A DNA stretch of 64,000 nt from positions 372,001 through 436,000 of IMG/VR virus record IMGVR_UViG_3300035182_002586; one strand, 5' to 3'. Below the pieces are notes generated by a model, which saw only the letters and a program-made list of their open reading frames with translations, did no database searches and was not told where the DNA came from. Positions 44,655 to 60,329 of this stretch are shown piece by piece; positions within the stretch are counted from its first letter, which is position 1; each line of letters opens with the position of its first letter. The position numbers and the translations under genes are program-made.

Positions 44655-45467
44655 TTAGACACCACCCGTGTGCTGGAAGAACAGGGCCACTTGCTCCGCG
44701 AGAATCGTCTCGATTTGCTCGTGGCTGGCCTTGAAAGAGATGCCGGGGAGCAACCCCACGTCTGCCGTATCGACCTCGAAGAAGACGTGGTGCGAATGCC
44801 GCCCCCACTGCTTCTCACGGTACGAGTACTTCTCCGCCCCCGACCACGACGCGTAGCCCGCGTCCAAACAGGCGAGGAGGAGCTGGAGATAGAAGCGACC
44901 GTCCGAGAGCAACGGACAACGGGTCCGGCGGTCCAAGTAGACGGCGAAGAGGAACGCGACGGACACGAGCGACGGGAACGCTTCCTCCGTGAGGGGGTAG
45001 CCCAAGCGCGTCGCGTGTTCGAGAATGGGGGCCGTCTCGATCTTCTGTTCTGCCGCCCACGAAGCGGAGGGGAGCACGACGAACCGAACTCCGCTCGGAT
45101 CAACCATCCCAGGATCCGCCCGAAAGAGGTCCGGAAGGAACACCGTGGCGATCATGCCCTCAGGCTCCCGCTGCCAGGTCACCTGGTAGCCCGCAGAGCG
45201 GAGCAGCTCCAAGCGATCACCGCCCTTGCGGGAGTTGTGGTACTCGTTGGCCTTGAGGAACATGCCCTTCCGGCCGCTAGTCAGGTTCGCCATGAAGGGG
45301 CGCATCTCCGCGTCGCTTCCGGCGAACATCGCCCACACGGGCCGTGTGTCGTCGGTCGTTGCGTTGCCGCCCGACCAGAGACCATCGGCGATGACACTGG
45401 CCAGGCAAAGGGCCTCGAACGAGCGCCCTTTGCCCTCCTGCTGCGGTGCGATGACGATGCGCCTCAT
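44655..45467 (-). CDS. Hypothetical protein, co-transcribed partner of the methyltransferase-helicase
   Basis: Start MRRIVI downstream of a GATGGATC cassette; abuts the next gene. Confidence 0.65.
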   Translation of the reverse strand: MRRIVIAPQQEGKGRSFEALCLASVIADGLWSGGNATTDDTRPVWAMFAGSDAEMRPFMANLTSGRKGMFLKANEYHNSRKGGDRLELLRSAGYQVTWQREPEGMIATVFLPDLFRADPGMVDPSGVRFVVLPSASWAAEQKIETAPILEHATRLGYPLTEEAFPSLVSVAFLFAVYLDRRTRCPLLSDGRFYLQLLLACLDAGYASWSGAEKYSYREKQWGRHSHHVFFEVDTADVGLLPGISFKASHEQIETILAEQVALFFQHTGGV

Positions 45468-45596
45468 CTCAGACCCTCTACCGCACGAACCCGAAGCCGA
45501 TCCATCGGGAATCGTCCGGAAGGCCCGGAGGCCACCATTCAAGGATACACCGTGATCCTTCGATACAAACAGAGGTGTACTCTATCAGGAGCCCCC

Positions 45597-45793
45597 ATGT
45601 CCTACACCTACGACCAACGCACCGCCTCGAAGAAGCTCACCCCGGCGCCGCCCGCATCCTCAAGGACGTGGAGCACGCGATGCAGGAAGCAGAAGAGATG
45701 AGCGGGCCGGAGGGGGAGGACTACCTCAACCTCATGGAAGCGATCGCGGCTGAGGCCAAGAAGCGGCACGACGCCTACAAGGCGACGCTCTAG
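45597..45793 (+). pseudogene. Small gene with an apparent frameshift
   Basis: AGGAG RBS + MSYTYDQRTASKKLTP; coding-like sequence continues in another frame (AARILKDVEHAMQ...KATL*); span is 197 nt. Confidence 0.5.
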
Positions 45794-46053
45794 GGCTTCT
45801 TCGGAACAGGGACTCCTCGACGCTCTAGCTCGGCACGCGCTTGCTTCAGGTCACGCTGAACCAAGTCATCGTCACCCGCATTCATCGAGTCGTAGCGACC
45901 CTCCACGAGGCCCACGAGGTACTCCGTCTCGGCCTCCTCAGGAACGAGGGTCCAGCGACCGGGGACGGCGAGCAAGCTCGGGGTGTCGGGCCCGAACTTG
46001 AACTTGGCCCCTCCCAGGGCCGCCAGAAGACCTCGGGGCTTGTTCTCGCTCAC
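45790..46053 (-). CDS. Hypothetical protein
   Basis: GTGA-coupled start. Confidence 0.5.
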   Translation of the reverse strand: MSENKPRGLLAALGGAKFKFGPDTPSLLAVPGRWTLVPEEAETEYLVGLVEGRYDSMNAGDDDLVQRDLKQARAELERRGVPVPKKP

Positions 46054-46361
46054 CTCTTGGACCTCTTGGTGCGCCGGCCGACCCCTTGGAGTTGCTCCAG
46101 CACGAACACAGCGTCGCTGTACATCTGAGCCCCTTTCTTCGAGGCAATGGGGTCCCCGTGGACGTTCACGTCGACGTCGTAACCGTGCGAGACGAGGAAC
46201 ATGGCCTCGGCCACCGTGAGCTTGCGGCTCACCCAGGTCTTGAAGGCGGGGCTCACGTCCCACAAGTACTCGGAGTTGTTCGGGCTCCGGTAGTTGTGGT
46301 TCTTGGGGAGGCGGGGCAGACAGTCCAACGGCCTCCAGTAGTTCGGTCGCGTCTCCGGCAT
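46050..46361 (-). CDS. Hypothetical protein
   Basis: Start MPETRPN coupled to the upstream stop. Confidence 0.55.
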   Translation of the reverse strand: MPETRPNYWRPLDCLPRLPKNHNYRSPNNSEYLWDVSPAFKTWVSRKLTVAEAMFLVSHGYDVDVNVHGDPIASKKGAQMYSDAVFVLEQLQGVGRRTKRSKR

Positions 46362-47242
46362 CACGCCTCCGTCAGAACCCGGAAGAACCTCTCCCGGTCG
46401 ATGGACACAGAGATACGGGTCCGCGTCCCCTCTGCGAGGCGCGAGCCCCACTCCCCCCGCTCACGGTAGACCTCGACCTCCCGGAAGGCACAGACCTCTC
46501 GGTCGATAGCCACCGCAGCCGCGAGGGGGTCGTGGAACGCCTTCCCCTCCGCCCTTCGCGCGAGGTAGACCTCCATCCCCTCTTGCACGAGGAGCATCCC
46601 CGCCGTCTTGTGCGTGAGCGCCTTGACCCTCTCGTGCATGGCCTGGTCGTACACAACGCCGTGGCAGACGTTCTTCGAGACGAGCCAGCGCTCCCCGATC
46701 CGGTCACTCGCGAGCATCTCCTTGGCGAGGTCGGGGGCTCCGTTGAAGTTGAAGGTCGGACACGTCTCCCGACCCGCGAACTTGGCCAACCGGTGCTCGG
46801 GCGGCACCACAGAGTCCCCCGCGAAACCCCCCTGCGCGACCCACGTGCCAATCCGCACGTCCGCGTGCTGTCGTAGAAGGGTCCCCGGATTCTTGAGCGC
46901 CGCGCCTGTAAGCATCGTGGCATCCGGGCGGCGACGGAACACGGCGGCCAAGATCTCGGCGCCGCTTCCCGTCGGGTCCGTTGGAGCGATGTCCCCGAGC
47001 CACCGGTGGTGGAACTCCGAGACGTTCTTCGGGTTGGAGGTGCCCGTGAACGCACCGATAGGGAGTGCGGATCGACCCAGGCGATCCAAGAGGTGACGGA
47101 CGATGCCTACCTGTTCGAGAGAGCCCGGCGTCACCGTGACCGCCATCAGGTCGACGCGCGGGTGTGTGGCCAGGATGCAGAGCGTGAGCGCGTCGTCCGG
47201 GTCCGACGTCTCCATGTCGAAGACAAGAGCCACAGGGTTCAT
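46361..47242 (-). CDS. Nucleoside hydrolase (IU-NH family)
   Basis: FDMETSDPDDALTL, TFNFN, AFHDPLAAAVAID. Confidence 0.85.
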   Translation of the reverse strand: MNPVALVFDMETSDPDDALTLCILATHPRVDLMAVTVTPGSLEQVGIVRHLLDRLGRSALPIGAFTGTSNPKNVSEFHHRWLGDIAPTDPTGSGAEILAAVFRRRPDATMLTGAALKNPGTLLRQHADVRIGTWVAQGGFAGDSVVPPEHRLAKFAGRETCPTFNFNGAPDLAKEMLASDRIGERWLVSKNVCHGVVYDQAMHERVKALTHKTAGMLLVQEGMEVYLARRAEGKAFHDPLAAAVAIDREVCAFREVEVYRERGEWGSRLAEGTRTRISVSIDRERFFRVLTEA

Positions 47243-47922: not shown

Positions 47923-47970
47923 CCCTGCTAGCCCTACACCGAATGTCCTGCGCGGTGTACGCGTAGTTGC

Positions 47971-48432
47971 ATGAAGGCGAAAACTCTCGTGCACAAGTGC
48001 CACCAGAACCTCCTGGAGCTGCACTCTCGCCTGTGCGTCGATGTGATCGACGACCACTCGAAGGCCGTCGCGCTGGCTGCGGCCAAGAAGCTCGCCGAAG
48101 ACGCCGCGCAGCTCGTCGAGGCGATCACGAGGGGCGTTCCCGAACCCCTGCCCAAGAGCCCCCCGTGTGTGGCGAACGTCGGCGAGGGCTTCGGCGGGTG
48201 GGACGAGGCCCTCGAAGACGGGACCCCGCGCTCCCCGCTCATCTTCTCGTGCCAGATCGAAGCACGGGCCAAAGCTCGAAAGCTCCTCCGGGAAGTGCTC
48301 GATATCCCTCTGGAAGTCGCCGCTCGTTCCGTACCCACGGATGCGGGGCCCGAGGTGTCGGACCGTGACGTGGAGAGGCTGGACGCCGCCCTCAAGGCGC
48401 ACCGGATCGACGCAAAGGTTTCGCGGCGCTAG
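47971..48432 (+). CDS. Hypothetical protein
   Basis: ATG 11 nt after CGGTGTA. Confidence 0.6.
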   Translation: MKAKTLVHKCHQNLLELHSRLCVDVIDDHSKAVALAAAKKLAEDAAQLVEAITRGVPEPLPKSPPCVANVGEGFGGWDEALEDGTPRSPLIFSCQIEARAKARKLLREVLDIPLEVAARSVPTDAGPEVSDRDVERLDAALKAHRIDAKVSRR

Positions 48433-48680: not shown

Positions 48681-48717
48681 AGCGCCTCCAAGAAGAAGTG
48701 GGACCCCCAGTGCCGTT

Positions 48718-49188: not shown

Positions 49189-49198
49189 CCCTACGCTG

Positions 49199-49558: not shown

Positions 49559-49584
49559 CCACAGGGGGTGGCGTATCGAAAGAA

Positions 49585-49708: not shown

Positions 49709-49712
49709 AATC

Positions 49713-50072
49713 TCACACGCTGACGCAGATCTCCCCCTCCTGACGCGCGCCTTCGACCGCCTCTGGGAAGGCGGCGACGATCGCCGCGTAACACTCCTCA
49801 CGCACCTGCTTGCGCCACGCGTCGATCGCGTCGAACCGCGCCTGGTTCCACTCGCCGTTGACGCGGACGGGGATGGCGTCGATCGCCCCCGGGAGACGGC
49901 GCGACGTGACGCTGCCGTGCACCTGGTTGCCGATCGTGAAGAGCGTCGAATGCGGGCCGAAGTACGACGACGGCTCGTAGACCGAGAACACGATGCGGCC
50001 CGTCGGGGCGATCGAGTTCTTGCACACCACGAACCCGCCGACCGCCTTCTTCTCGTTGATGTATTGCGCCAT
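49713..50072 (-). CDS. Hypothetical protein
   Basis: Start MAQYINEK directly after a GATGGATC cassette. Confidence 0.65.
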   Translation of the reverse strand: MAQYINEKKAVGGFVVCKNSIAPTGRIVFSVYEPSSYFGPHSTLFTIGNQVHGSVTSRRLPGAIDAIPVRVNGEWNQARFDAIDAWRKQVREECYAAIVAAFPEAVEGARQEGEICVSV

Positions 50073-50115
50073 GTCCCCTCTACAATGGGGGACCCCCGAC
50101 GATCCATCCGAGAAG

Positions 50116-50406: not shown

Positions 50407-50436
50407 CTCCTACGTCGTATGACAAGAGGAAGTTCG

Positions 50437-51756
50437 CTAGCCGTCGACAGACACTTCCTTCGCCGAGCAGTAGTGCAACTGCCCGCAATCGGGGCAGGTC
50501 ACCTCGACCTCGCCGCCCATCTTGCGGGGCTTGGCCGAGAGCTGCTTCTTGCACTTGTGGCAGGCGAACGAGCGGTCGACCGTCTCCTCCTCGGGCGGGA
50601 TGTAGACCTCGGGGCGGTCCCGGACGGCCCACCCGATCGACGGGCGGATCACGAGCGTCTCCGGGTCCTGCGAGTAGCCGAGGAGCCCCGCGACGAACTC
50701 CATCGGGAACTCCTGCTCGTAGTAGGACCACTTGAAGTCGACCTTCGAGAGGCTCGGGGGCACGGAGTCTACGGTCGGTCCGTGGTGGGAGTCGAAACCC
50801 GTGTCACGGTGACGCAGCTCGGAGGCGGGGCGCTCCCCCCACTTGAGGACGGTGGAGTTCTGGCACGTGTACTTGCCCGGGGACTTCCAGTCCTCGACGT
50901 ACGGGAAGAAGAACTGGATCCAGCCCGTCACGAAGGGCCCACCGGAGCCGCCCCCCTGGTGGTAGATGGACTGCCAGAACTTCTGGTCCTCCTGGCTCAG
51001 CGGGCCGTCGAATGCCCGGACGAAGTACTGGAGGATGCCGGAGAGGGGTTTCGTCCACCACCCGAGGTCGTACTCGGCGAGGACTTCCGCCCGCTGCTGG
51101 ACGCTCTTCCAATCGGCCTGCGTACCGAGGAGCGTGACCTCGGGGATCCCGCACATCGTCGAGACGCGGTACTCGAAGTAGTTGCGCATCGCGTCCATCA
51201 GGACGACCTCGGAAGCGGCGCGCTCGACGGGGCCCGTGGTCGAGAAGGCGGAGACCACGAGGTCCCGCTGCTTGCCGATGTGCTCGCCGATCTGATCGGA
51301 GAACTCGCCGAAGACCCCCTGCCAGTCGTTGGCGGCGGAGCCCTTCACGAAACTGTCCCGGACGACGAGCAGCTCTTTCTTGCCCTCGTGCTGGACGAAC
51401 CGGCTGCGCAAGGCTTCGGCGTTCGCGTCCACGTGCCGGGCGAACCCCTGCGCGATCGTGAGCCAGATGTCGTCCGGGCTCAGGGCGAGGGGGTAGTGAC
51501 GGTTGAACGCCGCGTCCACGGCCCCGAGGAGCCCGTTCGGCGTCCAGCCGTCGCAGATGTTCGGCGTGTTGACGCCGGACGCCTCGATGGTCGGCGGGGG
51601 CTTGGAGTGGCCCTCTTTGACATACCGGCTTGGCTTCACGCCGAGCTGGACGGAGAACGCCTTGTTGAAGTCCTGCGAGGTCGCGAGAGGGCCTTCCGGC
51701 TTGGTGAGCGGATTGCCCCTCGCGTCCTTCTCGTTGACCTTGAACTTGATCGCCAT
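50437..51756 (-). CDS. DUF4419-family protein with C-terminal zinc ribbon
   Basis: NGLLGAV..AFNRHYPLALSPDDIWLTIAQG, CGIPEVTLLGT..DW, GSGGP.VTGWI. Confidence 0.8.
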   Translation of the reverse strand: MAIKFKVNEKDARGNPLTKPEGPLATSQDFNKAFSVQLGVKPSRYVKEGHSKPPPTIEASGVNTPNICDGWTPNGLLGAVDAAFNRHYPLALSPDDIWLTIAQGFARHVDANAEALRSRFVQHEGKKELLVVRDSFVKGSAANDWQGVFGEFSDQIGEHIGKQRDLVVSAFSTTGPVERAASEVVLMDAMRNYFEYRVSTMCGIPEVTLLGTQADWKSVQQRAEVLAEYDLGWWTKPLSGILQYFVRAFDGPLSQEDQKFWQSIYHQGGGSGGPFVTGWIQFFFPYVEDWKSPGKYTCQNSTVLKWGERPASELRHRDTGFDSHHGPTVDSVPPSLSKVDFKWSYYEQEFPMEFVAGLLGYSQDPETLVIRPSIGWAVRDRPEVYIPPEEETVDRSFACHKCKKQLSAKPRKMGGEVEVTCPDCGQLHYCSAKEVSVDG

Positions 51757-51835: not shown

Positions 51836-52180
51836 CTAGAAGCGCTTGCCCTTGAGCAGCGAGTCGATCGTGCGGACGAGGGAGTCGTTGTACACGCCTT
51901 CGACCTTGCCCTCCTCGACCCACTTGATGCCCGTCGCCATGCGACGGCCGAGGATCTTCTCGAAGGTCTGCGCGTTGCGGCCCACGGTGACCTCGTAGAG
52001 GTCGCTGCCGGCGTCGAGCTTCACGATGACCTTGCGGCCACGCGCGAGGCAGAACTGGACGCCCGACTCGTCGAAGAGGACTTCCGTGCGGCCGGACATC
52101 CCGGTGATGCCCCACGAAGCGAGGGCGTAGCGGTCGGTGGCGCGGATCTGAGCGATGATGGTGGAGGCAACGGGGGTCAT
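51836..52180 (-). CDS. Hypothetical protein
   Basis: Follows a GATGGATC cassette; high GC3. Confidence 0.65.
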   Translation of the reverse strand: MTPVASTIIAQIRATDRYALASWGITGMSGRTEVLFDESGVQFCLARGRKVIVKLDAGSDLYEVTVGRNAQTFEKILGRRMATGIKWVEEGKVEGVYNDSLVRTIDSLLKGKRF

Positions 52181-52223
52181 GTCCCCTCTACAACGCGAGG
52201 GGTGGACCGATCCATCGAGATTG

Positions 52224-52493
52224 TTACAGCTTCCCGGTCAGATGGTACCGGTAGCGGCCGATCGTCTTGTCGAGCAGACCGTCGAGCGTGTCTTCCCCCA
52301 AGGTCCGCAGCGTGACCATCTTCCCGGGCATGATCCGGAAGCGCTTGTCACGCGCGGGGACTGCGACCGAAGTATCGAACGAGTACTGCCCTTGGATCAG
52401 AACGCGGTTGACCGTGACCATCGTGGCCTCGGGGATGGCTACCTGGATGGCCGCGCACAGCGTGTCGATGTCGTCGAGGGTCGGGGTCGGCAT
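52224..52493 (-). CDS. Hypothetical protein
   Basis: Follows a GATGGATC cassette. Confidence 0.65.
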   Translation of the reverse strand: MPTPTLDDIDTLCAAIQVAIPEATMVTVNRVLIQGQYSFDTSVAVPARDKRFRIMPGKMVTLRTLGEDTLDGLLDKTIGRYRYHLTGKL

Positions 52494-52531
52494 GTCTCCT
52501 CTACAGCGGGGCGCGGCCCCTGATCCATCCC

Positions 52532-52831
52532 CTACACCGAGACCATCGCGAACGCGTCGGCCAGGGCGGCCAAGAAGCTCGTGCGCTGCATCCAGATCGT
52601 GGTCGACGTGTCGCCGTTGTCACGGCTCGCGCAGTAGTAGCGGCCGAAGGGGCCAACCTGAACGTCGAGAACCGAGTCCTTGCCGTCCTTGACGAGGATG
52701 ACTGACGCGTCCTCGGACTCGTCCTTGGCGGGCTCGAAGCGCAGTTCGTACCCATGCTCACGCGCGAGCTTGGTGGACTTGGCCGAGATCGGGTTGTGGT
52801 TCACGTCGCGGGGGGTACGGGAGGTTGCCAT
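52532..52831 (-). CDS. Hypothetical protein
   Basis: Start MATSRTP after a cassette. Confidence 0.65.
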   Translation of the reverse strand: MATSRTPRDVNHNPISAKSTKLAREHGYELRFEPAKDESEDASVILVKDGKDSVLDVQVGPFGRYYCASRDNGDTSTTIWMQRTSFLAALADAFAMVSV

Positions 52832-52872
52832 GCTCCCTTTACAATGCGGGACCCGGATCGATCCATCGGGGG

Positions 52873-53169
52873 TCAGGGCGTGATCTTCGACGCCCACTCG
52901 GCCAGGGCCGTCGCGAGGTTGCCACCATTCGCTTCCGCAGCCTTCACGACCTCCTCGACGCGACCGTAGTGGTGGCTCCAGCCGTTCCCGAAGACGATGT
53001 TCGCCTTGTGTTCCCAGCAGACGGCCAGCATCTCGGTGCAGATGTTCGTCTGGCGCGAGACCTCGGACTTCGCACTGCTCTTCTTCAGGAGCAGGCCGGA
53101 GAGGGTCGCCAGGTTGTACTCGGTGGCGTTCGCGTACTGGTTGAAAATGTCCTTGGGGCCACGGTTCAT
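52873..53169 (-). CDS. Hypothetical protein
   Basis: GAGGAGG RBS. Confidence 0.6.
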   Translation of the reverse strand: MNRGPKDIFNQYANATEYNLATLSGLLLKKSSAKSEVSRQTNICTEMLAVCWEHKANIVFGNGWSHHYGRVEEVVKAAEANGGNLATALAEWASKITP

Positions 53170-53179: not shown

Positions 53180-53455
53180 TCACACCAGATCGAAGATCAC
53201 GCCCTTATCCTGGTCGGCAAAGTGGAACTTCGCCGTCTCACTGTCGACCTTGAAGGTCACGTAGCGCGTCCCGATGTCGGTGACGAGGCAACCACCGCCG
53301 CTGCCGCTGCCGCAGAAGGCGAGTTCGCCCTTGGAGTCGGTCACCGTGCTCTGGATGCGCAGCGCGGGCTTATGCCCGAAGAGCACCTGAAAGGCCGCCA
53401 CGACCTGGTTCAGCTCGCGGATGGAAGAGACCTCACGACGAATGTTGCTCGACAT
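53180..53455 (-). CDS. Hypothetical protein
   Basis: GGAGG RBS. Confidence 0.6.
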   Translation of the reverse strand: MSSNIRREVSSIRELNQVVAAFQVLFGHKPALRIQSTVTDSKGELAFCGSGSGGGCLVTDIGTRYVTFKVDSETAKFHFADQDKGVIFDLV

Positions 53456-53456: not shown

Positions 53457-53642
53457 TCAGACCTCCTCAGAGACGCGGGCGACGGCCTTGTTGAGACGGC
53501 GGGCCGCGCGAGCGGTGAAGCGCTTGGCCCAACGGGTGGACTTGGGGGAGCGGGCGACGGGCGACTCGAAGAAGTCGTGGCCCTTGAAGCTGTGGCAGGC
53601 GACGAGCGCCTTTTCGGCCTTGCGGAGGGATGCGGTGTTCAT
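53457..53642 (-). CDS. Small basic hypothetical protein
   Basis: Follows a cassette. Confidence 0.6.
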   Translation of the reverse strand: MNTASLRKAEKALVACHSFKGHDFFESPVARSPKSTRWAKRFTARAARRLNKAVARVSEEV

Positions 53643-53681
53643 ATCCCCACTACCGCGCGACCCCCGGATCGATCCATCAGG

Positions 53682-53963
53682 CTACTCGTCGAATTCCTCC
53701 GCAGCGAGGGAAGCCTCGAAATCCGCGTCGTCCCCGGCCCGGCGGGCGAAGTCCTCCGCGAACGCGTCCTGGATGAACGCCTTGGGCGGGGTCTTGGCCG
53801 CGAACGCCTCTGCGGCGACCATCTTGAGGTCGTAGGGGTCGTCGTCCGCGAAGCAGTCCGCGAGCCCAAGCTCGCTCTCCGCGTAGGCGGCGGCTCTTTC
53901 TCTCCACTGCTCGAAGGTCAGGACCGAAGCGGCCCTGACCCTCTTCTTGCGCCTCGCACCCAT
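53682..53963 (-). CDS. Small acidic hypothetical protein
   Basis: Start coupled to the upstream TGA. Confidence 0.55.
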   Translation of the reverse strand: MGARRKKRVRAASVLTFEQWRERAAAYAESELGLADCFADDDPYDLKMVAAEAFAAKTPPKAFIQDAFAEDFARRAGDDADFEASLAAEEFDE

Positions 53964-54553
53964 CACGCCCCCACGGGCGCGCCGCAGTTGAGCGAGCGGT
54001 TGCGGTAGAGGCCCTCGGAGCGGCGCTTGGCTGCGATCGCGCCACGGTCGCCGATGAGGGCTTCCCACTGGCGGGCGGAGAGGGGGGAGCGGTACTTGCG
54101 CTCCTCAGCCGGGGTCTCTAGCCAGGCGACGATCTGGTCGCGGAGCGACTTGCGGAACTCCGAGCGGAAGTTCTTGGTCTTGAGGAGCGTGGCGGCCGCC
54201 ATGCACTCGGCCATGTCCAGGCCGCGGAGACCGCGCTGCCACGCCTCGCACCAGGTCGGGTCCACGCCCGCGCCCCACAGGTACTTCCACGCGGTCACGT
54301 TGTCGGCCCACGACTGGACCGAGAGCCACGACGGGAGCGTGACCTCGTGGACCTCGTACTTGTTCGCGGTCACGAGCATGTCGTTGTCGTACGACATGCA
54401 GTAGCTCTCCTTGATCGAGAGCAGGTGGTCGTCGGCGCCGTCCACGAACGCGCGGATCGGGTCCGCGGCGGTGGTGACGTTCTCGCCCGTCTTCTGGAAG
54501 AGGACGCGGATGGTGGTGAGGGTCGAGGCGGCGGAGGCGGTCGTGATGTCCAT
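53963..54553 (-). CDS. Hypothetical protein
   Basis: Follows a cassette; high GC3. Confidence 0.65.
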   Translation of the reverse strand: MDITTASAASTLTTIRVLFQKTGENVTTAADPIRAFVDGADDHLLSIKESYCMSYDNDMLVTANKYEVHEVTLPSWLSVQSWADNVTAWKYLWGAGVDPTWCEAWQRGLRGLDMAECMAAATLLKTKNFRSEFRKSLRDQIVAWLETPAEERKYRSPLSARQWEALIGDRGAIAAKRRSEGLYRNRSLNCGAPVGA

Positions 54554-54586
54554 GTCCCTCCTACAACGCGGGCCAGACCCGATCCA

Positions 54587-54865
54587 TCAACTTTCGATCG
54601 CGAGGACGATGTAGCCCGTGGGCTTGCCCCCATCGAGCACGACCATGCCCATGCCCTGCACCTCGTCCAGGTTGATCAGGCCATACTTCGACGGCGAGAT
54701 GTCCAGGCCACGAACGTCGAGCACGGGCCGGAGGGACATCTTCTCCAAGTCCACGTGGTCGAGCGCGATGGAGGTGAGCTTCCGAAAGACCCCCATGAAG
54801 GTCCAATCGGGGGTCGTGTTGAAGGTCGATGGCGCGGGGTCTCGGTAGAGTAGGATGAACAGCAA
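54587..54865 (-). CDS. Hypothetical protein
   Basis: GGAGG RBS with TTG start. Confidence 0.5.
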   Translation of the reverse strand: MLFILLYRDPAPSTFNTTPDWTFMGVFRKLTSIALDHVDLEKMSLRPVLDVRGLDISPSKYGLINLDEVQGMGMVVLDGGKPTGYIVLAIES

Positions 54866-54877
54866 GGGGCCTCCAAG

Positions 54878-55507
54878 TCAGCGAAAGATCGCAGCACCGG
54901 GCATGGTCTTGGGCTCCGGGCGGCCGAGCTTCCGCCGGATCGCGGACGCCAGCATGTCCGGGAGGGTGCCCACGTCCGTAGGCAGCCCGGCGTCCTCACA
55001 GGCCGCCAGGAGCCACTGCAACAGCGCCACCTGCCCCTGCTCTCCGAGGTTCACCTGACTCGTGTTCGTGGGTGTACGGCGCCCACAGAGGGCGGGGTCG
55101 CTCACGACGAGGTGGGTCCGGCAGGGAGCCGGACGGTACTCGTATACTCGACAGAGCTTGGTCTCGGGGTCGAGCAGGGCACACTGGTGGCGCGCCTGCC
55201 ACCACTCGTGGCGGAGCGGGCCGATGTCGTCCGCGCCCCACACGAGGGCGACGGACTGACGGTCGAGGTTCGCGAGGATGGCCTCTACGTCCCCTTTGAG
55301 CGCCGGGTCGTTCACCACACGGTCCGCCAGTGCGTCCGCCTCGACGGCCGTAAGGACCACGAGGAGTTCGCAACAGGCGGAGCACCCCTTGGTGCAGGTC
55401 GGATGGTGCCGCTCGGCGGCGATCTGCATACTCCGGTCGATCTCCTGATAGATCGGGAGCAGAACGCGCGTCGAGCTGCGCTTCTTGGGGGTGGCCTTCT
55501 TAGGCAC
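54878..55507 (-). CDS. YkgJ-family Cys-cluster protein
   Basis: CTKGCSACC...CALLD...CRVYEYRPAPCR. Confidence 0.85.
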   Translation of the reverse strand: MPKKATPKKRSSTRVLLPIYQEIDRSMQIAAERHHPTCTKGCSACCELLVVLTAVEADALADRVVNDPALKGDVEAILANLDRQSVALVWGADDIGPLRHEWWQARHQCALLDPETKLCRVYEYRPAPCRTHLVVSDPALCGRRTPTNTSQVNLGEQGQVALLQWLLAACEDAGLPTDVGTLPDMLASAIRRKLGRPEPKTMPGAAIFR

Positions 55508-55799
55508 GCCGGACCTCGATCCGGTGCTCGGGGCGGCCGTCGTTCATGGCGACGAACACGTCCGAGAGGCGGTTCGTGTGACGGGCGTAGAACACGACCG
55601 TCTTGCCGCTGAGGCGGCCGTTCAGGAAGTAGAGAACGACCTGAACCTTGTGGCTGTAGTCGGCGCCGAGGGGCGTGATCGACTTGATCTGCGCCGTCGT
55701 CCCCTTGACGACATCGCGGCCGTTGCAGCCCTTCTCGATGCGGACGCGGGCGCCAGCGGTGAGAGCGGGGAGGGCGGGGGTGGTCGTCGTGGTGGTCAT
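55500..55799 (-). CDS. Hypothetical protein
   Basis: Start MTTTTTTP after a cassette. Confidence 0.6.
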   Translation of the reverse strand: MTTTTTTPALPALTAGARVRIEKGCNGRDVVKGTTAQIKSITPLGADYSHKVQVVLYFLNGRLSGKTVVFYARHTNRLSDVFVAMNDGRPEHRIEVRRA

Positions 55800-55853
55800 G
55801 TTCCCTCTACAACGCGTGGGTGGGGACGATCCATCAGAGAAGAAGTACACCAA

Positions 55854-56261
55854 TCAGATCCGGGACCACTTAGCCGAAGCCTCGGGGCGGTCACCCTTGC
55901 GAAGCGCGTCACGGACGACTTCTGCGAACGCACGGGCCGAGGTACGCGACGAGAACCGACGCTTGCTGGACCAGCTACCGCCGAGGAGGTCCTCGACCAC
56001 GATGACGAACTCGTTCGAGATCGCCTGGACGTGGACGTAGTGGGTGGGGTAGCGACCCACGGTCGAGGCGCGCGCCATCTCGGCGCCCACCGTCACGCGC
56101 TCCTGCTGCGCGGGAGTCATCGAGCGGTACTGGCTGCGGAGAGCCGCGAGGCGCTCGTTGTTCGCCTCGACCTCGCCGTCCGCCGTCACGCCCTCGTAAC
56201 CCTGGTGGTTCCAGATGAGGTCGTTGAGGTCCGCGTCCGAGAGCTTGGTGGAGGGGGCCAT
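55854..56261 (-). CDS. Hypothetical protein
   Basis: Follows a cassette. Confidence 0.6.
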   Translation of the reverse strand: MAPSTKLSDADLNDLIWNHQGYEGVTADGEVEANNERLAALRSQYRSMTPAQQERVTVGAEMARASTVGRYPTHYVHVQAISNEFVIVVEDLLGGSWSSKRRFSSRTSARAFAEVVRDALRKGDRPEASAKWSRI

Positions 56262-56294
56262 GCTCCTACTACAACGCGAGGCGCGGCCGATCCA

Positions 56295-56654
56295 TCAGCC
56301 CTCGGGTGGATCTTCCTCCACCGAGCTGAAGTTCCCACTCAGGAGGGACGCCAGCTCTTTCATGGCGTCCAGCTTGTCTTCGAGGCTACGGCGCGCGACC
56401 TGGAGCGCTTCGAGCTTCGCACTCTCCGCGTCCGCGATGTCCGCCTGGAGGCGAACCCGGTCGAGCCCGAGCTGAGGGCAGGACACGAACCACACGTCTT
56501 TCTCGTGGATCCACCCGTGGATGCTGATGCGGAGACCCTTGTGCGCCACCTCCCACGCGTCCGCGCGGGCCTCACCCCGGCGCTGGCCGGGCATGTAGCT
56601 GTAGCTCGTCACGTCCTTCCACTCGGGCTTCGCCGGGGGTGGCGGGAGCGGCAC
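56295..56654 (-). CDS. Hypothetical protein
   Basis: 119-aa ORF. Confidence 0.55.
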   Translation of the reverse strand: MPLPPPPAKPEWKDVTSYSYMPGQRRGEARADAWEVAHKGLRISIHGWIHEKDVWFVSCPQLGLDRVRLQADIADAESAKLEALQVARRSLEDKLDAMKELASLLSGNFSSVEEDPPEG

Positions 56655-56710
56655 GTTGATCGGGCGGGGGGGTCTTCTTGCGGGACGCCAGGACTCAATC
56701 TCCAGAGGGG

Positions 56711-56737
56711 AAGAAGAGGGGGCGTTTCCGCCCCCTC
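56711..56737 (-). terminator. Probable intrinsic terminator
   Basis: GAGGGGGCG-GAAA-CGCCCCCTC then TTCTT on the minus strand. Confidence 0.7.
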
Positions 56738-56744
56738 GGGGATG

Positions 56745-57323
56745 TCAGGCGAGGACCGCCAGGGTGTCACCCACGCGGACGACGCTGCCGGCGCCGAAGA
56801 CGGCGGCGAGAGCCTCCATGAGGGCCGGCTCGGACGAGACGGGCATCACGCGAGCCTTGCGCGCGCGGTCCCACGAGGCGCCCGCGATGCGGTAGCAGGC
56901 CGAGATGAACCGCTCGTTGTAGGGGGTCTTCACGACCAGGGTGTTGCCGTCGCGCTCGACCGAGAGGTCCGAGAGGCGCTTGGCCACGCGGTTCGCCAGC
57001 TTGGTGAAGCCGCAGGCAGCCACGGCGGCCGTCCAGCGGGCCACGTTCTCGCCCGTCTGCTTGAGCGCGATCCGGTGGACCAGGACGTTCGCCGCGCGGC
57101 GGGCGTCACCCTCGACGATGGCCTTGGTGGCCTCGGGGACGTCGTACGCGAGAGCGAACGCTTCCTCAGGGTCCATGGCCGTCTGAGACTTGCTGAGGCC
57201 GTGACGCTTTGCACACTCAGGACCAACGCCACGTTCAACGGATTCTGCGTCAACAAGCTCTTTGCCGCAGCAGGCACAGTGAGTGGCCACGAGGATCGTC
57301 GCGGGAGCGTTTTCGTATGACAT
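56745..57323 (-). CDS. DUF6011-like zinc-finger protein
   Basis: CACCGKELVDAESVERGVGPECAKR; start MSYENAP after a cassette. Confidence 0.7.
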   Translation of the reverse strand: MSYENAPATILVATHCACCGKELVDAESVERGVGPECAKRHGLSKSQTAMDPEEAFALAYDVPEATKAIVEGDARRAANVLVHRIALKQTGENVARWTAAVAACGFTKLANRVAKRLSDLSVERDGNTLVVKTPYNERFISACYRIAGASWDRARKARVMPVSSEPALMEALAAVFGAGSVVRVGDTLAVLA

Positions 57324-57432
57324 GCCCCCTCTACAACAGGGGGAGCTAGAGATCCATCGGCATGGCGAACGATTTCCACGTGGGCCAAACACACGGGCGG
57401 CACGTACGCGGTCCAACACCAGTGTTGACGGG

Positions 57433-57735
57433 TCACCCCTTACAGAGGGTGTACCCCTTCTCCGGGGCCTTGGCCCTGAACTCCTCGTAGAAGCGGTCCG
57501 CCGCTTCCTTCCCGTCCCCATACGTGGGCCACGGGCGCCCCACGACACGCTGCGCCAGCACCTTCCCCATCGCCTCTCGGGTGCAGGTGTCCATCCCCCC
57601 AAGGAGGAGTTCCGACGCCACGGCCGGGTCCATGAGCAGCTCACGCGCCTGCTCGTCGGTGAGGTCGACCTCCATCCAGTCGTGGCACTCAGCGCGGGCA
57701 GCAGCGATGTCTTTGGGAGAGGGCTCGAAGGTCAT
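57433..57735 (-). CDS. Hypothetical protein
   Basis: ATG 10 nt after CGGTGTA. Confidence 0.6.
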   Translation of the reverse strand: MTFEPSPKDIAAARAECHDWMEVDLTDEQARELLMDPAVASELLLGGMDTCTREAMGKVLAQRVVGRPWPTYGDGKEAADRFYEEFRAKAPEKGYTLCKG

Positions 57736-57755
57736 GCCCTCGATCTACACCGGGG

Positions 57756-58274
57756 TCACGACGCCGGAACGACGGTCGCGCGCAAGTCCAGGGTAGCTTC
57801 ACGCAGCGCCCGGATGCGATCGAGCCCGGCTTCCTTTGACGCAGTGAGAGAGATCTGCGTCACGTTCGCCTTGCCCGCCTCGTAGTAGACGAAGCCCACG
57901 AGGCGTCGCATGGGATCGTCCGCTCGGTAGAGCTTCTTGCCTTCGAGGGCATCGAGGGCCTGAGCTACGTCGGAGGTTACTTCCGCGTCCGTCTTGCGCT
58001 CCATGAGCGTGTGGTTGCGGGTCGGGCGGTAGCAGCCCACCTCGACGACGTTCGGGACGACGAAGCCGAAGGGCATCCACTCGAAGGACGCGACCTCTTC
58101 CTGATCCCCCACCTGTCGGAAGCACATGTACCCGATCACGCCGTGTGTCGGGAGGTCCGCCGGGAGCTTCGTCCACCCCTCGGCGACGAGCTTGTCAGCG
58201 GCGGCCCTCATGGCTTCGTACGTTGGAAACGCCTTCTTGGCGGTCTCCGCGAGCGTCTGTTCGTAACTGTTCAT
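57756..58274 (-). CDS. Hypothetical protein
   Basis: 172-aa ORF. Confidence 0.6.
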   Translation of the reverse strand: MNSYEQTLAETAKKAFPTYEAMRAAADKLVAEGWTKLPADLPTHGVIGYMCFRQVGDQEEVASFEWMPFGFVVPNVVEVGCYRPTRNHTLMERKTDAEVTSDVAQALDALEGKKLYRADDPMRRLVGFVYYEAGKANVTQISLTASKEAGLDRIRALREATLDLRATVVPAS

Positions 58275-58409
58275 GTTGATGCGATCCCCTTGTGATCAGG
58301 GGGTTCGCATCGAAAGAAATGTCTACCGCGCCCCGTTCCAACGCGGTTGGTGTATATCAAGCCGACCGAGCTGTGATGGATCAGAGCTACCCCCTGCGGT
58401 AGTAGGACC

Positions 58410-60329
58410 ATGAGCGACAAGATCGTCCGTGCCACCATCGACCCCGGCAGAGGGGAGGTCGTCGAGAACGATGACGGCCCGAAGGTTGGCCAGTGGTTCC
58501 ACGTCAACGGCACGGACTGGCGGGGCAAGAAGACTCGCTGGCTGGCCTGCTGCATTCACATCGGCACGAACTACGCCCTGCTGGAGAGCGTGGGACGCGG
58601 GGAAACCCGCGTCCACTTGGACGAGTTCTGGAAGACCTGCGAGCCCGTCGAGAACCCGGACGAGATCATCGACGGGGCCGTCTTGAAGCACCGGAAGGAA
58701 ATCGCGCGGCTCATGGGCCGCGTCCGGGAGATCACCGCGCGGTTGGGGGTGGGGGACACCCCCGCCCTGACCGGAGGGTCCGAAGAGACCAGCGCCCTCG
58801 CGCTCCGGACCGACGAGCCCGTCAAGGAGTACAAGACGGCCCTCGTCAAGGCGAAGGACGAAGACCTCCCGAAGCTCTTCGAGAAGATCAAGGACGAGAG
58901 CAAGTCGCTGTCGCACTGGATGTCGGCGAAGCTCATCCCGCTCGAAGCCGAGGCCAAGTCCCTGGAGGGGAGCCTCAACGCCATCAAGCGCCGCATCTTC
59001 TCCGTCGAGCTGTACGCGGGCCTGACCGAGGATGTCGTCGAAGTCCTCGACGGGGAGCCGGCCCCGACCGACACGAAGATCCACCTGATGCAGCGTCGCT
59101 GCTACATGGACGAGGAGTGCCTCGTTCAGTACGAGATCGGGGGGATGAGCTTCGACAGCATCGAGGAGTTCGATGCTTGGCTGGCACGCCCGGCCAACTT
59201 CCAGCGGATCTTGCCCTTCCCGCGAACGGTCGTGGCGTTCCGCGTCCGCCGCACGATGAAGGACCGTGAGGTTCTCACGCTCAGGGACTTCTTCGAGTTC
59301 GCTTTCGAGTCTTCGGCGAACAAGAAGACGTTCATCTACATCCGCAACGGCGGGCGCCTGTACCGCCTGTCGACGGGCATCGAGTTCGACGAGCAGCTCT
59401 TCCCGGACCTCGACGCGCAGATCCTCGCGACCGGTAAGGTCTACGCGAAGATGTTCGCGAACCGCGTGGACCGTCTCGCGTCCGAGGGAGAGTACCTCGA
59501 ACTCCTCAAGCATGAGGCCGAGCAGAAGCGCCTGTACGAAGCAGCGGACGAGAAGGATAAGTGGCGGTACAGCCACAGCTTTCACGACTCGGATCGCTAC
59601 GTCGCGTACACGCCGGAGTCCGTCTACTACGACGACATCTCCAAGTACATCGCCGAAGAGATGGCGCGCCACAACCGCCTCGTCCTCGTGCTCCAGGGGC
59701 TCCTTGACCGGTCCCCGGTGATGCACCCCCACCCGCCGTGGCAGCTCTGGACGCACGAGGGCTTCACGTCCGCCCTCCAGCTCGTCTACGACAACGCCCG
59801 AGCCCTCGTGGCCGGGGACAAGCCCGACTTCGAGGCGTACCGCGCCCGGCTGAACGCCTCGTTGAAGGTGGGGTCGATCACGGTTGGCCAGGAAGTCATG
59901 TGGGAGATGGCCGAGGCCGAGAAGGAAACGGAGCGTCGGCGCCAGAGTTCTCGCGGACGCTCCTCCGACTACGAGTTGAAGCGCTACCGGCCCTACGGCA
60001 ACCCGGGCCCCGGAACGCTCGCGAAGGTCACGAAGATCGCCCCCCGTGCGAAGACCTGCACGTACGAGTGGGATCGCCAGCGCCGCACCTACGACCGGTG
60101 GGATCGCAACCCGGCGCCCGTGCACGTGACCCATACGGCACCCTTCGACGCGATCCTGAACGTCGACGCGTACAAGCCGGGAGACTTCAAGCAGTTCTAC
60201 GACGATCCCCGGACGCGTGCGGAGTACCTGGAGTGGGCGCCCCTTCTGCTCGTGGCCGAGGAGTACCACGCGGGCTGCCGCGATGTTGGACTGCCGCAGG
60301 GCAAGAGGAAGAAGGACGAGGATGAGTGA
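58410..60329 (+). CDS. Large hypothetical phage protein
   Basis: 639 aa, high GC3, preceded by the plus-strand cassette. Confidence 0.8.
   Translation: MSDKIVRATIDPGRGEVVENDDGPKVGQWFHVNGTDWRGKKTRWLACCIHIGTNYALLESVGRGETRVHLDEFWKTCEPVENPDEIIDGAVLKHRKEIARLMGRVREITARLGVGDTPALTGGSEETSALALRTDEPVKEYKTALVKAKDEDLPKLFEKIKDESKSLSHWMSAKLIPLEAEAKSLEGSLNAIKRRIFSVELYAGLTEDVVEVLDGEPAPTDTKIHLMQRRCYMDEECLVQYEIGGMSFDSIEEFDAWLARPANFQRILPFPRTVVAFRVRRTMKDREVLTLRDFFEFAFESSANKKTFIYIRNGGRLYRLSTGIEFDEQLFPDLDAQILATGKVYAKMFANRVDRLASEGEYLELLKHEAEQKRLYEAADEKDKWRYSHSFHDSDRYVAYTPESVYYDDISKYIAEEMARHNRLVLVLQGLLDRSPVMHPHPPWQLWTHEGFTSALQLVYDNARALVAGDKPDFEAYRARLNASLKVGSITVGQEVMWEMAEAEKETERRRQSSRGRSSDYELKRYRPYGNPGPGTLAKVTKIAPRAKTCTYEWDRQRRTYDRWDRNPAPVHVTHTAPFDAILNVDAYKPGDFKQFYDDPRTRAEYLEWAPLLLVAEEYHAGCRDVGLPQGKRKKDEDE

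What the first reader, a model, noticed from the sequence alone, without database searches (positions are those of the whole stretch)
45467..58410. Array of promoter-plus-gene cassettes defined by GATGGATC-N14/15-(TT)GTAG-RBS-like-ATG
Seen: 11 copies with an invariant 8-mer, a variable GC-rich spacer, a conserved GTA(G) box and a 27-28 nt distance to ATG (one at 31). Nearly every copy heads a different small unknown gene, upstream stops sometimes overlap the motif (TGATGGATC at 54587 and 56295), and the outermost copies diverge at 57351/58375. The core contains GATC, a Dam-type methylation site. Known: T4-type early-promoter cassettes mediate gene shuffling, and bipartite fixed-spacing motifs typify alternative sigma promoters. 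Inference: a phage-specific early regulon with leaderless or very short leaders that may double as recombination points for swapping host-takeover genes.
Basis: partly seen in the sequence, partly recalled or inferred. Interest (0 to 1): 0.7.

Follow-up and report, generated by a model that had tools for sequence, protein, structure and literature searches.

The report
Huge-phage sigma promoters heading leaderless genes
The repeated GATGGATC…GTAG…ATG motif is most likely a phage-specific promoter, read by a previously undescribed sigma factor that this 529-kb phage encodes, which starts each small gene's mRNA right at its ATG; it belongs to a genome-wide set of about 180 such promoters.

Summary
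The window lies in a 529-kb, 64% GC huge-phage record that holds about 67 copies of GATGGATC-N16/17-GTAG-N7-ATG, against 0 in a reversed-sequence control.

The geometry is that of a -35/-10 promoter whose start site falls on the A of ATG. All 55 tightly spaced start codons are ATG. The purine run sits too close to the ATG to be a normal ribosome-binding site, whereas internal genes carry GAGGAGG 6-7 nt upstream.

The 61 headed proteins are almost all unrelated, so the motif is not a by-product of gene duplication.

A second, -35-less class (GGTGTAS-N8-11-ATG, about 110 sites) shares the GTAG core.

The phage has no RNA polymerase genes and no excess of sigma-70-type promoters. It does encode a divergent ECF-like sigma factor. 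In six independent phage contigs the gene for this sigma is preceded by that phage's own version of the motif (GGATC, TTGATC or CGAAC at -35, always GTAG at -10).

No transcript data exist, so "early" timing and start sites are unproven. The idea that the motifs are recombination points is neither supported nor excluded.

The parts
45465..45506 (-). Class I promoter: GATGGATC 45499-45506, GTAG 45478-45481, ATG 45465-45467 (10 nt after GTAG). Heads the 270-aa gene 44655-45467.
50070..50108 (-). Class I promoter: 8-mer 50101-50108, GTAG 50080-50083, ATG 50070-50072. Heads the 119-aa gene 49713-50072.
52178..52216 (-). Class I promoter: 8-mer 52209-52216, GTAG 52188-52191, ATG 52178-52180. Heads the 114-aa gene 51836-52180.
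   Evidence: In related strains, homology breaks at 52217.
52491..52529 (-). Class I promoter heading the 89-aa gene 52224-52493.
52829..52867 (-). Class I promoter (GTAA variant of the -10 box) heading the 99-aa gene 52532-52831.
53640..53678 (-). Class I promoter heading the 61-aa gene 53457-53642. Two downstream genes follow, 53180-53455 and 52873-53169, each with GAGGAGG 6-7 nt before its ATG.
54551..54588 (-). Class I promoter (16-nt spacer) heading the 196-aa gene 53963-54553. The TGA stop of the upstream gene overlaps the 8-mer.
55797..55835 (-). Class I promoter heading the 99-aa gene 55500-55799.
   Evidence: A strain breakpoint lies at 55835.
56259..56296 (-). Class I promoter (16-nt spacer) heading the 135-aa gene 55854-56261. 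The TGA stop of the upstream gene overlaps the 8-mer.
   Evidence: Strain breakpoints lie at 56289 and 56297.
57321..57358 (-). Class I promoter heading the 192-aa gene 56745-57323.
   Evidence: A homolog in related contig L058 is also headed by the motif.
58375..58412 (+). Class I promoter heading the 639-aa gene 58410-60329, which is conserved across the phage clade.
51754..51773 (-). Class II promoter-like site: GGTGTAG, then 10 nt, then ATG. Heads the DUF4419 gene 50437-51756.
57733..57751 (-). Class II site: GGTGTAG, then 9 nt, then ATG. Heads gene 57433-57735.
47934..47973 (.). Back-to-back pair of class II sites: 47934-47940 on the minus strand and 47954-47960 on the plus strand. The plus-strand site heads gene 47971-48432.
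43040..43047 (-). Isolated GATGGATC inside the 1307-aa methyltransferase-helicase gene. It has no GTAG/ATG partner and is not part of the regulon.

Best explanation
**Proposed mechanism.**
- The motif is a promoter of the sigma-70/ECF type.
- GATGGATC lies at about -36 to -29 and acts as the -35 element. After a 16-17-nt spacer, (Y)KGTAG lies at about -12 to -8 and acts as the -10 element.
- A G-rich discriminator follows, and transcription starts at the A of CATG. Most transcripts are therefore leaderless, with the first base being the A of the start codon.
- Host core RNA polymerase is directed to these sites by a phage-encoded, divergent ECF-like sigma factor of 393 aa (G000:93299-94480, outside the window).
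- The same sigma probably also reads a second, -35-less class, YGGTGTAS-N8-11-ATG.
- A leaderless gene must sit at a transcript's 5' end. This explains why the small genes of the array each carry their own promoter, while the second and third genes of short operons use ordinary Shine-Dalgarno sequences.

**Status of each step.**
- Shown: the motif statistics, the geometry, the link to start codons, the existence of the sigma family, and its co-occurrence and co-variation with the motif.
- Inferred: the transcription start sites, which protein binds the motif, and the timing of expression.
For: **1. Statistics**
- 12 copies in the window against 2 expected.
- About 67 sites genome-wide against 0 in the control.
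- The spacer is 16 nt in 17 sites and 17 nt in 40 sites.

**2. Link to gene starts**
- 53 of 55 motif ATGs open reading frames with coding-type third-position GC of 0.8-0.97.
- The ATG lies exactly 7 nt after GTAN in 44 sites and 8 nt after it in 9.
- Position -1 is C in 43 of 51 sites.

**3. Leaderless signature**
- All 55 starts are ATG, compared with 74% ATG among 82 genes led by a Shine-Dalgarno sequence.
- The purine run lies 1-4 nt from the ATG, whereas Shine-Dalgarno sequences elsewhere peak at 6-8 nt.
- The roughly 8 sites whose ATG is 19-45 nt away carry a proper Shine-Dalgarno sequence in that leader.
- Internal genes have GAGGAGG 6-7 nt before the ATG.

**4. Not gene duplication**
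- 61 headed proteins fall into 59 clusters.

**5. The polymerase must be the host's**
- No beta or beta-prime domains were found.
- TTGAC...TANNNT promoters are not enriched: 8 against 7 in the control.

**6. The sigma candidate**
- Its family has 257 cluster representatives.
- 23 of 60 members hit Pfam Sigma70_r2, the best at 1e-8.
- The structural model has pLDDT 81.
- The top structural matches are almost all sigma region-2 domains, with Z of 5.6-7.0.

**7. Autoregulation-style co-variation**
- The sigma gene is preceded by the local motif plus a leader carrying a Shine-Dalgarno sequence in six contigs.
- The -35 boxes are GATGGATC in G000 and L166, CTTGGATC in L192, TTTGATC in L297 and L298, and CCGAAC in G001.
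- G001 has about 45-55 copies of CCGAAC-N16-CGTAG-N7-ATG, against 11 in the control.

**8. Phyletic match**
- Class II sites are enriched only in the three genomes that carry the sigma family: G000 113 against 5, G001 27 against 4, G004 20 against 5.
- G002 (1 against 3) and G003 (7 against 1) lack the family.
Against: - There are no transcript data. No RNA run was listed, so start sites, timing and dependence on the sigma factor are all inferred.
- The sigma protein itself scores below Pfam and NCBIfam cut-offs (E 0.024; 16 bits). Foldseek matches are not significant. A VIA-align Z of 7 is within the range that unrelated helical proteins can reach.
- The sigma gene sits behind its own promoter type, and no sigma-70-type promoter was found. 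How the first sigma molecules are made is therefore unexplained.
- GGATC departs from the canonical ECF AAC at -35.
- Only five whole genomes and six sigma-bearing contigs support the co-variation.
- The host is unknown, so a host sigma with this specificity cannot be excluded.
Confidence: 0.66

Rival explanations
1. The motif is a leaderless promoter, but a host sigma factor reads it (a host ECF or other alternative sigma, or an unusual housekeeping sigma). In this view the class I genes, including the phage sigma gene, are true early genes, and the phage sigma then reads only class II promoters, forming a cascade.
For: - The sigma gene lies behind a class I motif, which would solve the bootstrapping problem.
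- Class I genes are small genes of unknown function plus defence-like genes, which is typical early content.
- The ECF-like geometry is shared with many cellular ECF promoters (from memory).
- Class II tracks the presence of the sigma family.
Against: - The -10 core GTAG and the downstream GTAGTAGGGACATG are shared by class I and class II and by phages with different -35 boxes. One reader is the simpler explanation.
- An invariant 8-mer in about 67 copies is unusual for promoters read by a host sigma.
- Host ECF sigmas are normally held inactive by anti-sigma factors (established knowledge).
- The -35 box differs between related phages in step with their own sigma's C-terminal region.
Confidence: 0.17
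2. GATGGATC is the binding site of a separate phage DNA-binding protein that replaces or supplements -35 recognition, while a sigma factor reads only GTAG. The protein could be an activator acting like the T4 MotA box, the stand-alone 117-aa sigma region-4 protein, or a repressor operator overlapping the promoter.
For: - The phage encodes a stand-alone sigma region-4 protein. Its best PDB matches are RpoS and SigA region 4 (E 2.5e-9), and Pfam Sigma70_r4 scores 5.6e-18.
- It also encodes a 215-aa protein with two region-4-like helix-turn-helix domains.
- The 8-mer is far more invariant than the -10 box.
- Class II shows that the -10 part can stand alone.
Against: - G001 has the same architecture with a different -35 box but no homolog of the 117-aa protein.
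- The 16-17-nt spacing and the co-variation with the ECF-like sigma fit direct recognition by sigma region 4.
- No binding data exist either way.
Confidence: 0.1
3. The primary role of the motif is recombinational: a cassette junction used to shuffle small genes, as with T4-type PeSL elements or integron attC sites. Promoter-like features would be secondary.
For: - Contigs of related strains lose homology exactly at the edges of the 8-mer (52217, 55835, 56289/56297).
- Related contigs share the motif, but most of their motif-headed genes have no homolog here.
Against: - The fixed 7-nt distance to an ATG, the strict orientation with the gene, and the 16-17-nt bipartite spacing are initiation features, not recombination-site features.
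- There are no stem-loops or inverted repeats at the motif: mean folding z is about 0, and terminator-like sites are not enriched.
- The motif fills the whole intergenic gap, so any breakpoint at a gene boundary maps to it.
- The joints reported had short sides of 20-26 nt, which is consistent with cross-matching between motif copies.
Confidence: 0.04
4. The conserved block acts at the RNA level, as a 5'UTR element or an unusual ribosome-binding site, on transcripts that start further upstream.
For: A purine-rich run (GAGGGG or GGAGG) precedes the ATG.
Against: - The spacing of 1-4 nt is unlike the genome's own Shine-Dalgarno spacing of 6-8 nt.
- Two invariant boxes separated by a variable spacer of constrained length are a feature of DNA recognition.
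- No folding signal was found and there is no Rfam match.
- Starts are exclusively ATG.
Confidence: 0.03

Closest known systems
ECF (group 4) sigma-factor promoters, e.g. B. subtilis sigma-W TGAAAC-N16-CGTA and the general GGAAC-N16/17-CGT pattern (consensus recalled from memory, not checked here)
   Same: - Bipartite layout with a 16-17-nt spacer.
- A -10 box built on (C/K)GTA.
- A -35 box ending in A(A/T)C.
- The sigma gene is preceded by its own target promoter.
- Relative G001 uses a near-canonical CCGAAC-N16-CGTAG.
   Different: - The -35 box here is GATGGATC (GGATC rather than GGAAC).
- The sigma is 393 aa, with an N-terminal extension and an insertion of about 110 aa in region 2.
- No anti-sigma factor was identified.
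- The regulon has roughly 67-180 promoters on a phage genome, and almost all are leaderless.
Regulons of phage-encoded sigma factors (SPO1 gp28 and gp33/34, T4 gp55, phiEco32 gp36; from memory)
   Same: A phage supplies a sigma factor that redirects host core RNA polymerase to a highly conserved phage-only promoter consensus.
   Different: - The sigma family is different: no tblastn match in 50,697 GenBank phage records.
- Two promoter architectures share one -10 core.
- The start site is systematically placed on the start codon.
- The -35 box diversifies among relatives.
T4 middle promoters (MotA box at -30 plus a sigma-70 -10 box, sigma appropriation by AsiA/MotA; from memory)
   Same: A conserved 8-9-bp box replaces the host -35 element at about -30 in many copies upstream of small early or middle genes.
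   Different: - The -10 box here is not of the host sigma-70 type.
- No MotA or AsiA homologs were sought or found.
- The stand-alone sigma region-4 protein is only a speculative counterpart.
   Same: A repeated promoter unit flanks small, highly variable genes of unknown function. Related genomes differ by whole units.
   Different: - There is no stem-loop component.
- No mini-circle or junction evidence was found.
- The promoter type is different.
Leaderless gene expression in Actinobacteria, Deinococcus-Thermus and their phages (from memory)
   Same: The -10 box lies about 6-7 nt upstream of a start codon that coincides with the transcription start site. ATG is strongly preferred.
   Different: - The -10 box there is TANNNT, read by the housekeeping sigma.
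- Here it is GTAG, with a phage sigma as the candidate reader.
- The host is unknown. GroEL hints at Planctomycetota.

Membership tests
Sigma-70-family bipartite promoter | Two conserved boxes separated by a spacer that is constrained in length but variable in sequence (16-18 nt) | tested here: met
   The 8-mer is invariant and GTAG is present in 45 of 51 aligned sites. The spacer is 16 nt in 17 sites, 17 nt in 40, and 15 nt in 1.
Sigma-70-family bipartite promoter | Transcription starts about 6-8 nt downstream of the -10 box | not testable with these tools
   No RNA run was listed. The only indirect support is that the ATG lies 7 nt after GTAG and is preceded by C at -1.
ECF-type promoter | A -35 box containing AAC and a -10 box containing CGT, 16-17 nt apart | tested here: inconclusive
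   The spacing and the GTA core are met. The -35 box is GGATC in this phage (AAC not met) but CGAAC in relative G001 (met).
ECF-type promoter | The cognate sigma gene is preceded by its own target promoter | tested here: met
   Seen in six contigs with three types of -35 box.
ECF / sigma-70-family sigma factor (the 393-aa protein) | A region 2 domain detectable by sequence profile | tested here: inconclusive
   The protein itself scores below cut-off: PF04542 E 0.024 and TIGR02937 16 bits. Among 60 family members, 23 match Sigma70_r2, the best at 1e-8.
ECF / sigma-70-family sigma factor (the 393-aa protein) | The region 2 fold | tested here: inconclusive
   The model has pLDDT 81. The top 17 VIA-align matches are almost all sigma region-2 domains, but Z is only 5.6-7.0. 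Foldseek E-values are 0.66 or higher.
ECF / sigma-70-family sigma factor (the 393-aa protein) | A C-terminal region 4 helix-turn-helix domain | tested here: inconclusive
   A few family members match Sigma70_r4, r4_2, ECF or other HTH models. The protein itself has a helical C-terminal domain (residues 323-384) but no direct match.
ECF / sigma-70-family sigma factor (the 393-aa protein) | Compact two-domain size of about 170-220 aa | tested here: not met
   The protein is 393 aa. It has a disordered N-terminus of about 70 aa and an inserted domain at about residues 136-250.
Leaderless mRNA | The start codon is at the 5' end, there is no Shine-Dalgarno sequence at functional spacing, and AUG is preferred | tested here: met
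   The sequence-level criteria are met. The 5' end itself has not been mapped.
PeSL / T4-type mobile promoter cassettes | The promoter is coupled to a stem-loop, and cassettes excise as circles | tested here: not met
   No folding signal at or upstream of the motif (mean z 0.04 and 0.36). Terminator-like sites number 6 against 8 expected. Circles were not tested.
Integron attC cassettes | Imperfect inverted-repeat sites downstream of promoterless cassettes, plus an integrase | tested here: not met
   The motif lies upstream of genes at a fixed distance from the ATG and has no dyad symmetry. An integrase was not searched for.
Dam-regulated promoter | A GATC in the promoter whose methylation state changes its activity | not testable with these tools
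   GATC is present in the -35 box and two D12-class methyltransferases are encoded. However, GATC is at its expected frequency (0.96) and relatives' -35 boxes lack it.

The most novel reading that the evidence does not exclude
A widespread but undescribed family of huge-phage sigma factors (257 cluster representatives, none in cultured phages or in 185,000 prokaryote species genomes) drives an almost wholly leaderless, one-promoter-per-gene transcription programme.

- **Natural orthogonal sigma/promoter pairs.** The region-4/-35 specificity has diversified between related phages (GGATC, TTGATC, CGAAC) while the -10 core GTAG stays fixed.
- **Possible delivery with the virion.** The 529-kb record shows no excess of sigma-70-type promoters and the sigma gene sits behind its own promoter. 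The first sigma molecules may therefore arrive with the virion.
- **Possible role in gene exchange.** The near-identical 40-nt promoter units may also serve as short homology tracts for exchanging accessory genes.
Probability: 0.3. Interest if true: 0.78.

Novelty: new variant of a known kind. Interest (0 to 1): 0.6.

Why it matters
**What it would provide**
- The transcription logic of uncultured huge phages is almost unknown. This would give a readable promoter code of about 180 sites in one 529-kb genome, tied to a candidate factor.
- That code would allow operons and gene starts to be annotated in a whole clade of 360-620-kb phages whose proteins mostly have no known relatives.

**Biology**
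- It suggests why arrays of tiny accessory genes each carry a promoter: leaderless translation needs the ATG at the 5' end of the transcript.

**Practical use**
- A sigma family with a fixed -10 core and naturally diversified -35 specificities would be a ready set of candidate orthogonal sigma/promoter pairs for testing in vitro.

**Limits**
- It does not show a new kind of regulation. Phage sigma regulons and leaderless mRNAs are both known.

Tried and rejected
**Transcript data**
- Two searches for RNA sequencing runs listed none (one search failed because the machine was busy). Only metagenome DNA runs hold the sequence.

**Near relatives**
- A megablast search against GenBank phages found no match.
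- A scan of IMG/VR for the motif pattern gave only 6 single, chance-level hits.
Only about five short contigs truly share the motif.

**Cultured relatives**
- The cultured phages that share the 639-aa protein (Erythrobacter and Mesorhizobium phages) use ordinary TTGAC-type promoters with leaders, so they are not models for this system.

**Phage RNA polymerase**
- Rejected: no Rpb1_2 or Rpb2_6 domains were found. A T7-like polymerase was not searched for.

**Split sigma gene**
- I tested whether the 273-aa ORF upstream of the region-4 ORF is the missing front half of a split sigma gene. It has no sigma-like match.

**Sigma candidate against solved structures**
- Sequence and profile searches against PDB were uninformative.
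- The first structural model, built from 5 sequences, was poor (pLDDT 54).
- hhalign of the sigma family against the 117-aa protein found nothing.

**Other motifs and causes tested**
- TTGAC-N17-GTAG as a repeated class in G004 is not enriched.
- Tandem gene duplication as the source of the repeat is rejected.
- GATC over-representation is rejected.

**Host identification**
- A genome-contig scan with the sigma family found nothing.
- GroEL points weakly to Planctomycetota.
- The tmRNA tag and the cultured-phage hits point weakly to Alphaproteobacteria.
- The host remains unresolved.

**Terminase**
- The Pfam terminase hit is only marginal (E 0.008).

Full report
**Context**

- The window is G000:C1:372001-436000 of a 528,957-bp IMG/VR virus record with 64% GC.
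- The record carries 53 tRNA genes and a tmRNA gene.
- In the window it encodes GroEL, a ribonucleotide reductase with an intein, and a methyltransferase-helicase fusion.
- Most of its proteins match no PHROG family.
- One of its proteins is on record on a 620-kb contig, so the "provirus" record is probably a trimmed piece of a larger phage contig.
- Near-identical DNA occurs only in sediment, microbial-mat, groundwater and wastewater metagenomes.

**Checking the observation**

- GATGGATC occurs 12 times in the window against 2.0 expected. None of 100 shuffles reaches 12.
  - After the 8-mer comes a 16- or 17-nt spacer, then GTAG (once GTAA), then ATG 7 nt later (once 10 nt later).
  - This gives 27-28 nt, or in one case 31 nt, between the 8-mer and the ATG.
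- The overlaps with upstream TGA stop codons at 54587 and 56295 are real.
- An independent repeat finder recovers the same family.
- Genome-wide there are 78 copies of the 8-mer, and 55-58 of them sit in the full layout.
- A two-block weight matrix finds about 67 sites scoring above 20, against none in the reversed sequence.
- Sites are dense at 417-529 kb and 0-9 kb and sparse elsewhere.
The consensus is GATGGATCG-N6/7-CYCNCRYKGTAGWRGGGRC-ATG.

**What the motif is**

- With the A of ATG numbered +1, GTAG lies at -11 to -8 and the 8-mer at about -36 to -29. This is the geometry of a -35/-10 promoter whose start site falls on the start codon.
- The nearly invariant C at -1 and A at +1 fit the usual pyrimidine-purine preference at start sites (established knowledge).
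- 53 of 55 motif-linked ATGs open frames with third-position GC of 0.8-0.97, the coding signature of this genome.
- Several features argue for leaderless mRNAs rather than an unusual ribosome-binding site.
  - All 55 closely spaced starts are ATG. Among 82 genes with an unambiguous Shine-Dalgarno sequence, only 74% start with ATG.
  - GGAG/GAGG peaks 6-8 nt before the start in non-motif genes, but lies 1-4 nt before it at motif genes.
  - The roughly eight sites whose ATG lies 19-45 nt downstream carry a normal Shine-Dalgarno sequence in that leader.
  - Inside the array, second and third genes such as 53180-53455 and 52873-53169 have GAGGAGG 6-7 nt upstream.
- This gives a simple reason for one promoter per small gene: a leaderless gene must be first on its transcript.
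- The motif is not a by-product of gene duplication. The 61 headed proteins form 59 blastp clusters.
- It shows no folding signal, is not accompanied by terminator-like hairpins, and matches no Rfam family.

**A second promoter class**

- Many genes without the 8-mer are preceded by YGGTGTA(G/C) followed 8-11 nt later by a start codon.
- Of 272 GGTGTAS sites, 116 (43%) precede a coding start, against 6-7% for permuted controls.
- The stricter pattern gives 113 hits against 5 in the control.
- Class II heads DNA methyltransferases, helicases and nucleotide-metabolism enzymes.
- Class I heads mostly genes of unknown function. The exceptions are an SNF2 helicase, a GmrSD-like protein and an HATPase.

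**Who reads the motif**

- The record has no RNA polymerase beta or beta-prime domains.
- TTGAC...TANNNT promoters are not enriched: 8 against 7 in the control.
- Profile searches found three sigma-like genes:
  - a stand-alone region-4 protein of 117 aa;
  - a 215-aa protein with two region-4-like domains;
  - a 393-aa protein with a weak region-2 match.
- The 393-aa protein belongs to a family with 257 cluster representatives.
  - 23 of 60 members match Pfam Sigma70_r2, with E-values down to 1e-8, and a few match region-4 models.
  - With a 60-sequence alignment the structural model reaches pLDDT 81.
  - Its best structural matches among 48,161 chains are almost all sigma region-2 domains: ECF sigmas, SigB, sigma-28 and T4 gp55.
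  - The Z-scores are modest, at 5.6-7.0, and the match is split by an inserted domain.
  - Foldseek gives no significant match.
- I read this protein as a divergent ECF-like sigma, with moderate confidence.

**Link between the sigma and the motif**

- In G000 the sigma gene is preceded by GATGGATC-N17-GTAC and a 21-nt leader carrying a Shine-Dalgarno sequence.
- Its 60%-identical ortholog on contig L166 has GATGGATC-N17-GTAG.
- More distant members carry other -35 boxes:
  - CTTGGATC-N17-GTAG on L192;
  - TTTGATC-N16-GTAG or GTAT on L297 and L298;
  - CCGAAC-N16-CGTAG on G001.
- Each of those -35 variants is the one repeated in that phage's own genome.
  - G001 (372 kb) has about 45-55 copies of CCGAAC-N16-CGTAG-N7-ATG, against 11 in the control. 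They are again clustered at the ends of the genome and again have the ATG exactly 7 nt after GTAG.
  - L298 has TTGATC-N17-GTAG-N7-ATG sites.
- The C-terminal helices of the sigmas differ in step with the -35 groups, although only six sequences were compared.
- Class II enrichment is confined to the three genomes that carry the family (G000, G001, G004). It is absent or weak in G002 and G003, which instead have a full-length conventional sigma.
- A promoter upstream of its own sigma gene, and co-variation of the -35 box with region 4, are the standard arguments used to assign ECF target promoters (established practice; the ECF consensus is recalled from memory).

**What remains open**

- No RNA data exist, so start sites, timing and dependence on the sigma are inferred. 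"Early" is unproven.
- The source of the first sigma molecules is unexplained.
- A host sigma, or a separate protein that binds the 8-mer, remain possible readers.
- The host is unknown.
  - GroEL's nearest cellular relatives are Planctomycetota, at 45-47% identity.
  - The conserved 639-aa protein's nearest cultured relatives are alphaproteobacterial phages that lack the motif.

**The recombination idea**

- Contigs from other metagenomes share the full motif (L031, L032, L058, L072, L142).
  - L032 is 74% identical to 422.9-424.2 kb.
  - Most of their motif-headed genes have no homolog in G000.
- Contigs of related strains in runs X4 and X5 lose homology exactly at the edges of the 8-mer: 52217, 55835, 56289 and 56297. 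Meanwhile the one listed difference inside the motif at 52178-52216 keeps the consensus.
- So gene content does turn over in units of promoter plus gene.
- However, the motif occupies the whole intergenic gap, often overlapping the upstream stop codon. The reported joints have short sides of 20-26 nt that could be cross-matches between motif copies.
- The data therefore cannot separate motif-mediated exchange from ordinary mosaicism at gene boundaries.

**GATC**

- Two D12-class (Dam-like) methyltransferases are encoded.
- GATC is at its expected frequency (observed/expected 0.96).
- The CCGAAC -35 box of relative G001 lacks GATC, so methylation control is not a general feature of this promoter type.

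**Verdict**

- The best explanation is a phage-specific, sigma-dependent promoter regulon that produces leaderless mRNAs.
- This is a new variant of a known kind of system. It is interesting mainly for the undescribed sigma family, the scale and regularity of leaderless initiation, and the natural diversification of the -35 box.

Noticed in passing
G000:123254-123328 (outside the window): A tRNA with anticodon TTA, which would read the stop codon UAA, lies among 53 tRNA genes and a tmRNA gene (tag ANDNGTVITALKAAA) at 123-177 kb. No recoding was assumed or tested.
   Followed up: no
G000:479437-479790 (outside the window): A stand-alone sigma region-4 protein of 117 aa (Pfam Sigma70_r4 5.6e-18; closest PDB matches are region 4 of RpoS and SigA). 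Its TGA stop overlaps the next class I -35 box. Relatives G002 and G003 carry full-length sigmas with a homologous region 4. G001 and G004 have none.
   Followed up: partly
G000:71524-72171 (outside the window): A 215-aa protein with two sigma region-4-like helix-turn-helix domains.
   Followed up: no
G000:501849-504236 (outside the window): A 796-aa protein with a Cas12f1-like TNB domain (TnpB/Cas12-like), headed by a class II site.
   Followed up: no
window:49585-49708: A perfect 20-nt inverted repeat with 84 nt between the arms, just downstream of the motif-headed gene 49713-50072, in a stretch with no convincing gene.
   Followed up: no
window:47934-47960; also G000:132112-132151 and 95061-95105: Class II sites often occur as back-to-back palindromic pairs (CTACACC...GGTGTAG) between divergent genes. 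This suggests compact bidirectional promoters.
   Followed up: partly
whole record G000: Sigma-70-type TTGAC-N17-19-TANNNT promoters are not enriched anywhere in the 529 kb (8 against 7 in the control). This leaves open how transcription of the phage begins.
   Followed up: partly
whole record G000: IMG/VR labels the record a provirus, but one of its proteins is on record on a 620,031-bp contig and the motif regulon runs to both ends of the record. The record is probably a trimmed piece of a larger phage genome.
   Followed up: no
G000: 122275(-), 135328(+), 187708(+), 285392(-), 493882(+): High-scoring class I sites with no gene at +1. One is followed by a 3-codon mini-ORF (ATG TCC TAC TGA). 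They may drive non-coding RNAs or mRNAs with leaders.
   Followed up: no
window:25562-28792, 33846-35495, 40731-44654: A ribonucleotide reductase with an ATP-cone and an intein; a GroEL whose nearest cellular relatives are Planctomycetota (45-47% identity); and a 1307-aa fusion of a DUF6094 methyltransferase with an SNF2 helicase.
   Followed up: partly
G000:94461-96014; L166; L193: The sigma gene keeps the same neighbours in distant relatives: a dephospho-CoA kinase on the opposite strand, then an N6/N4 DNA methyltransferase. Conserved synteny supports orthology.
   Followed up: partly
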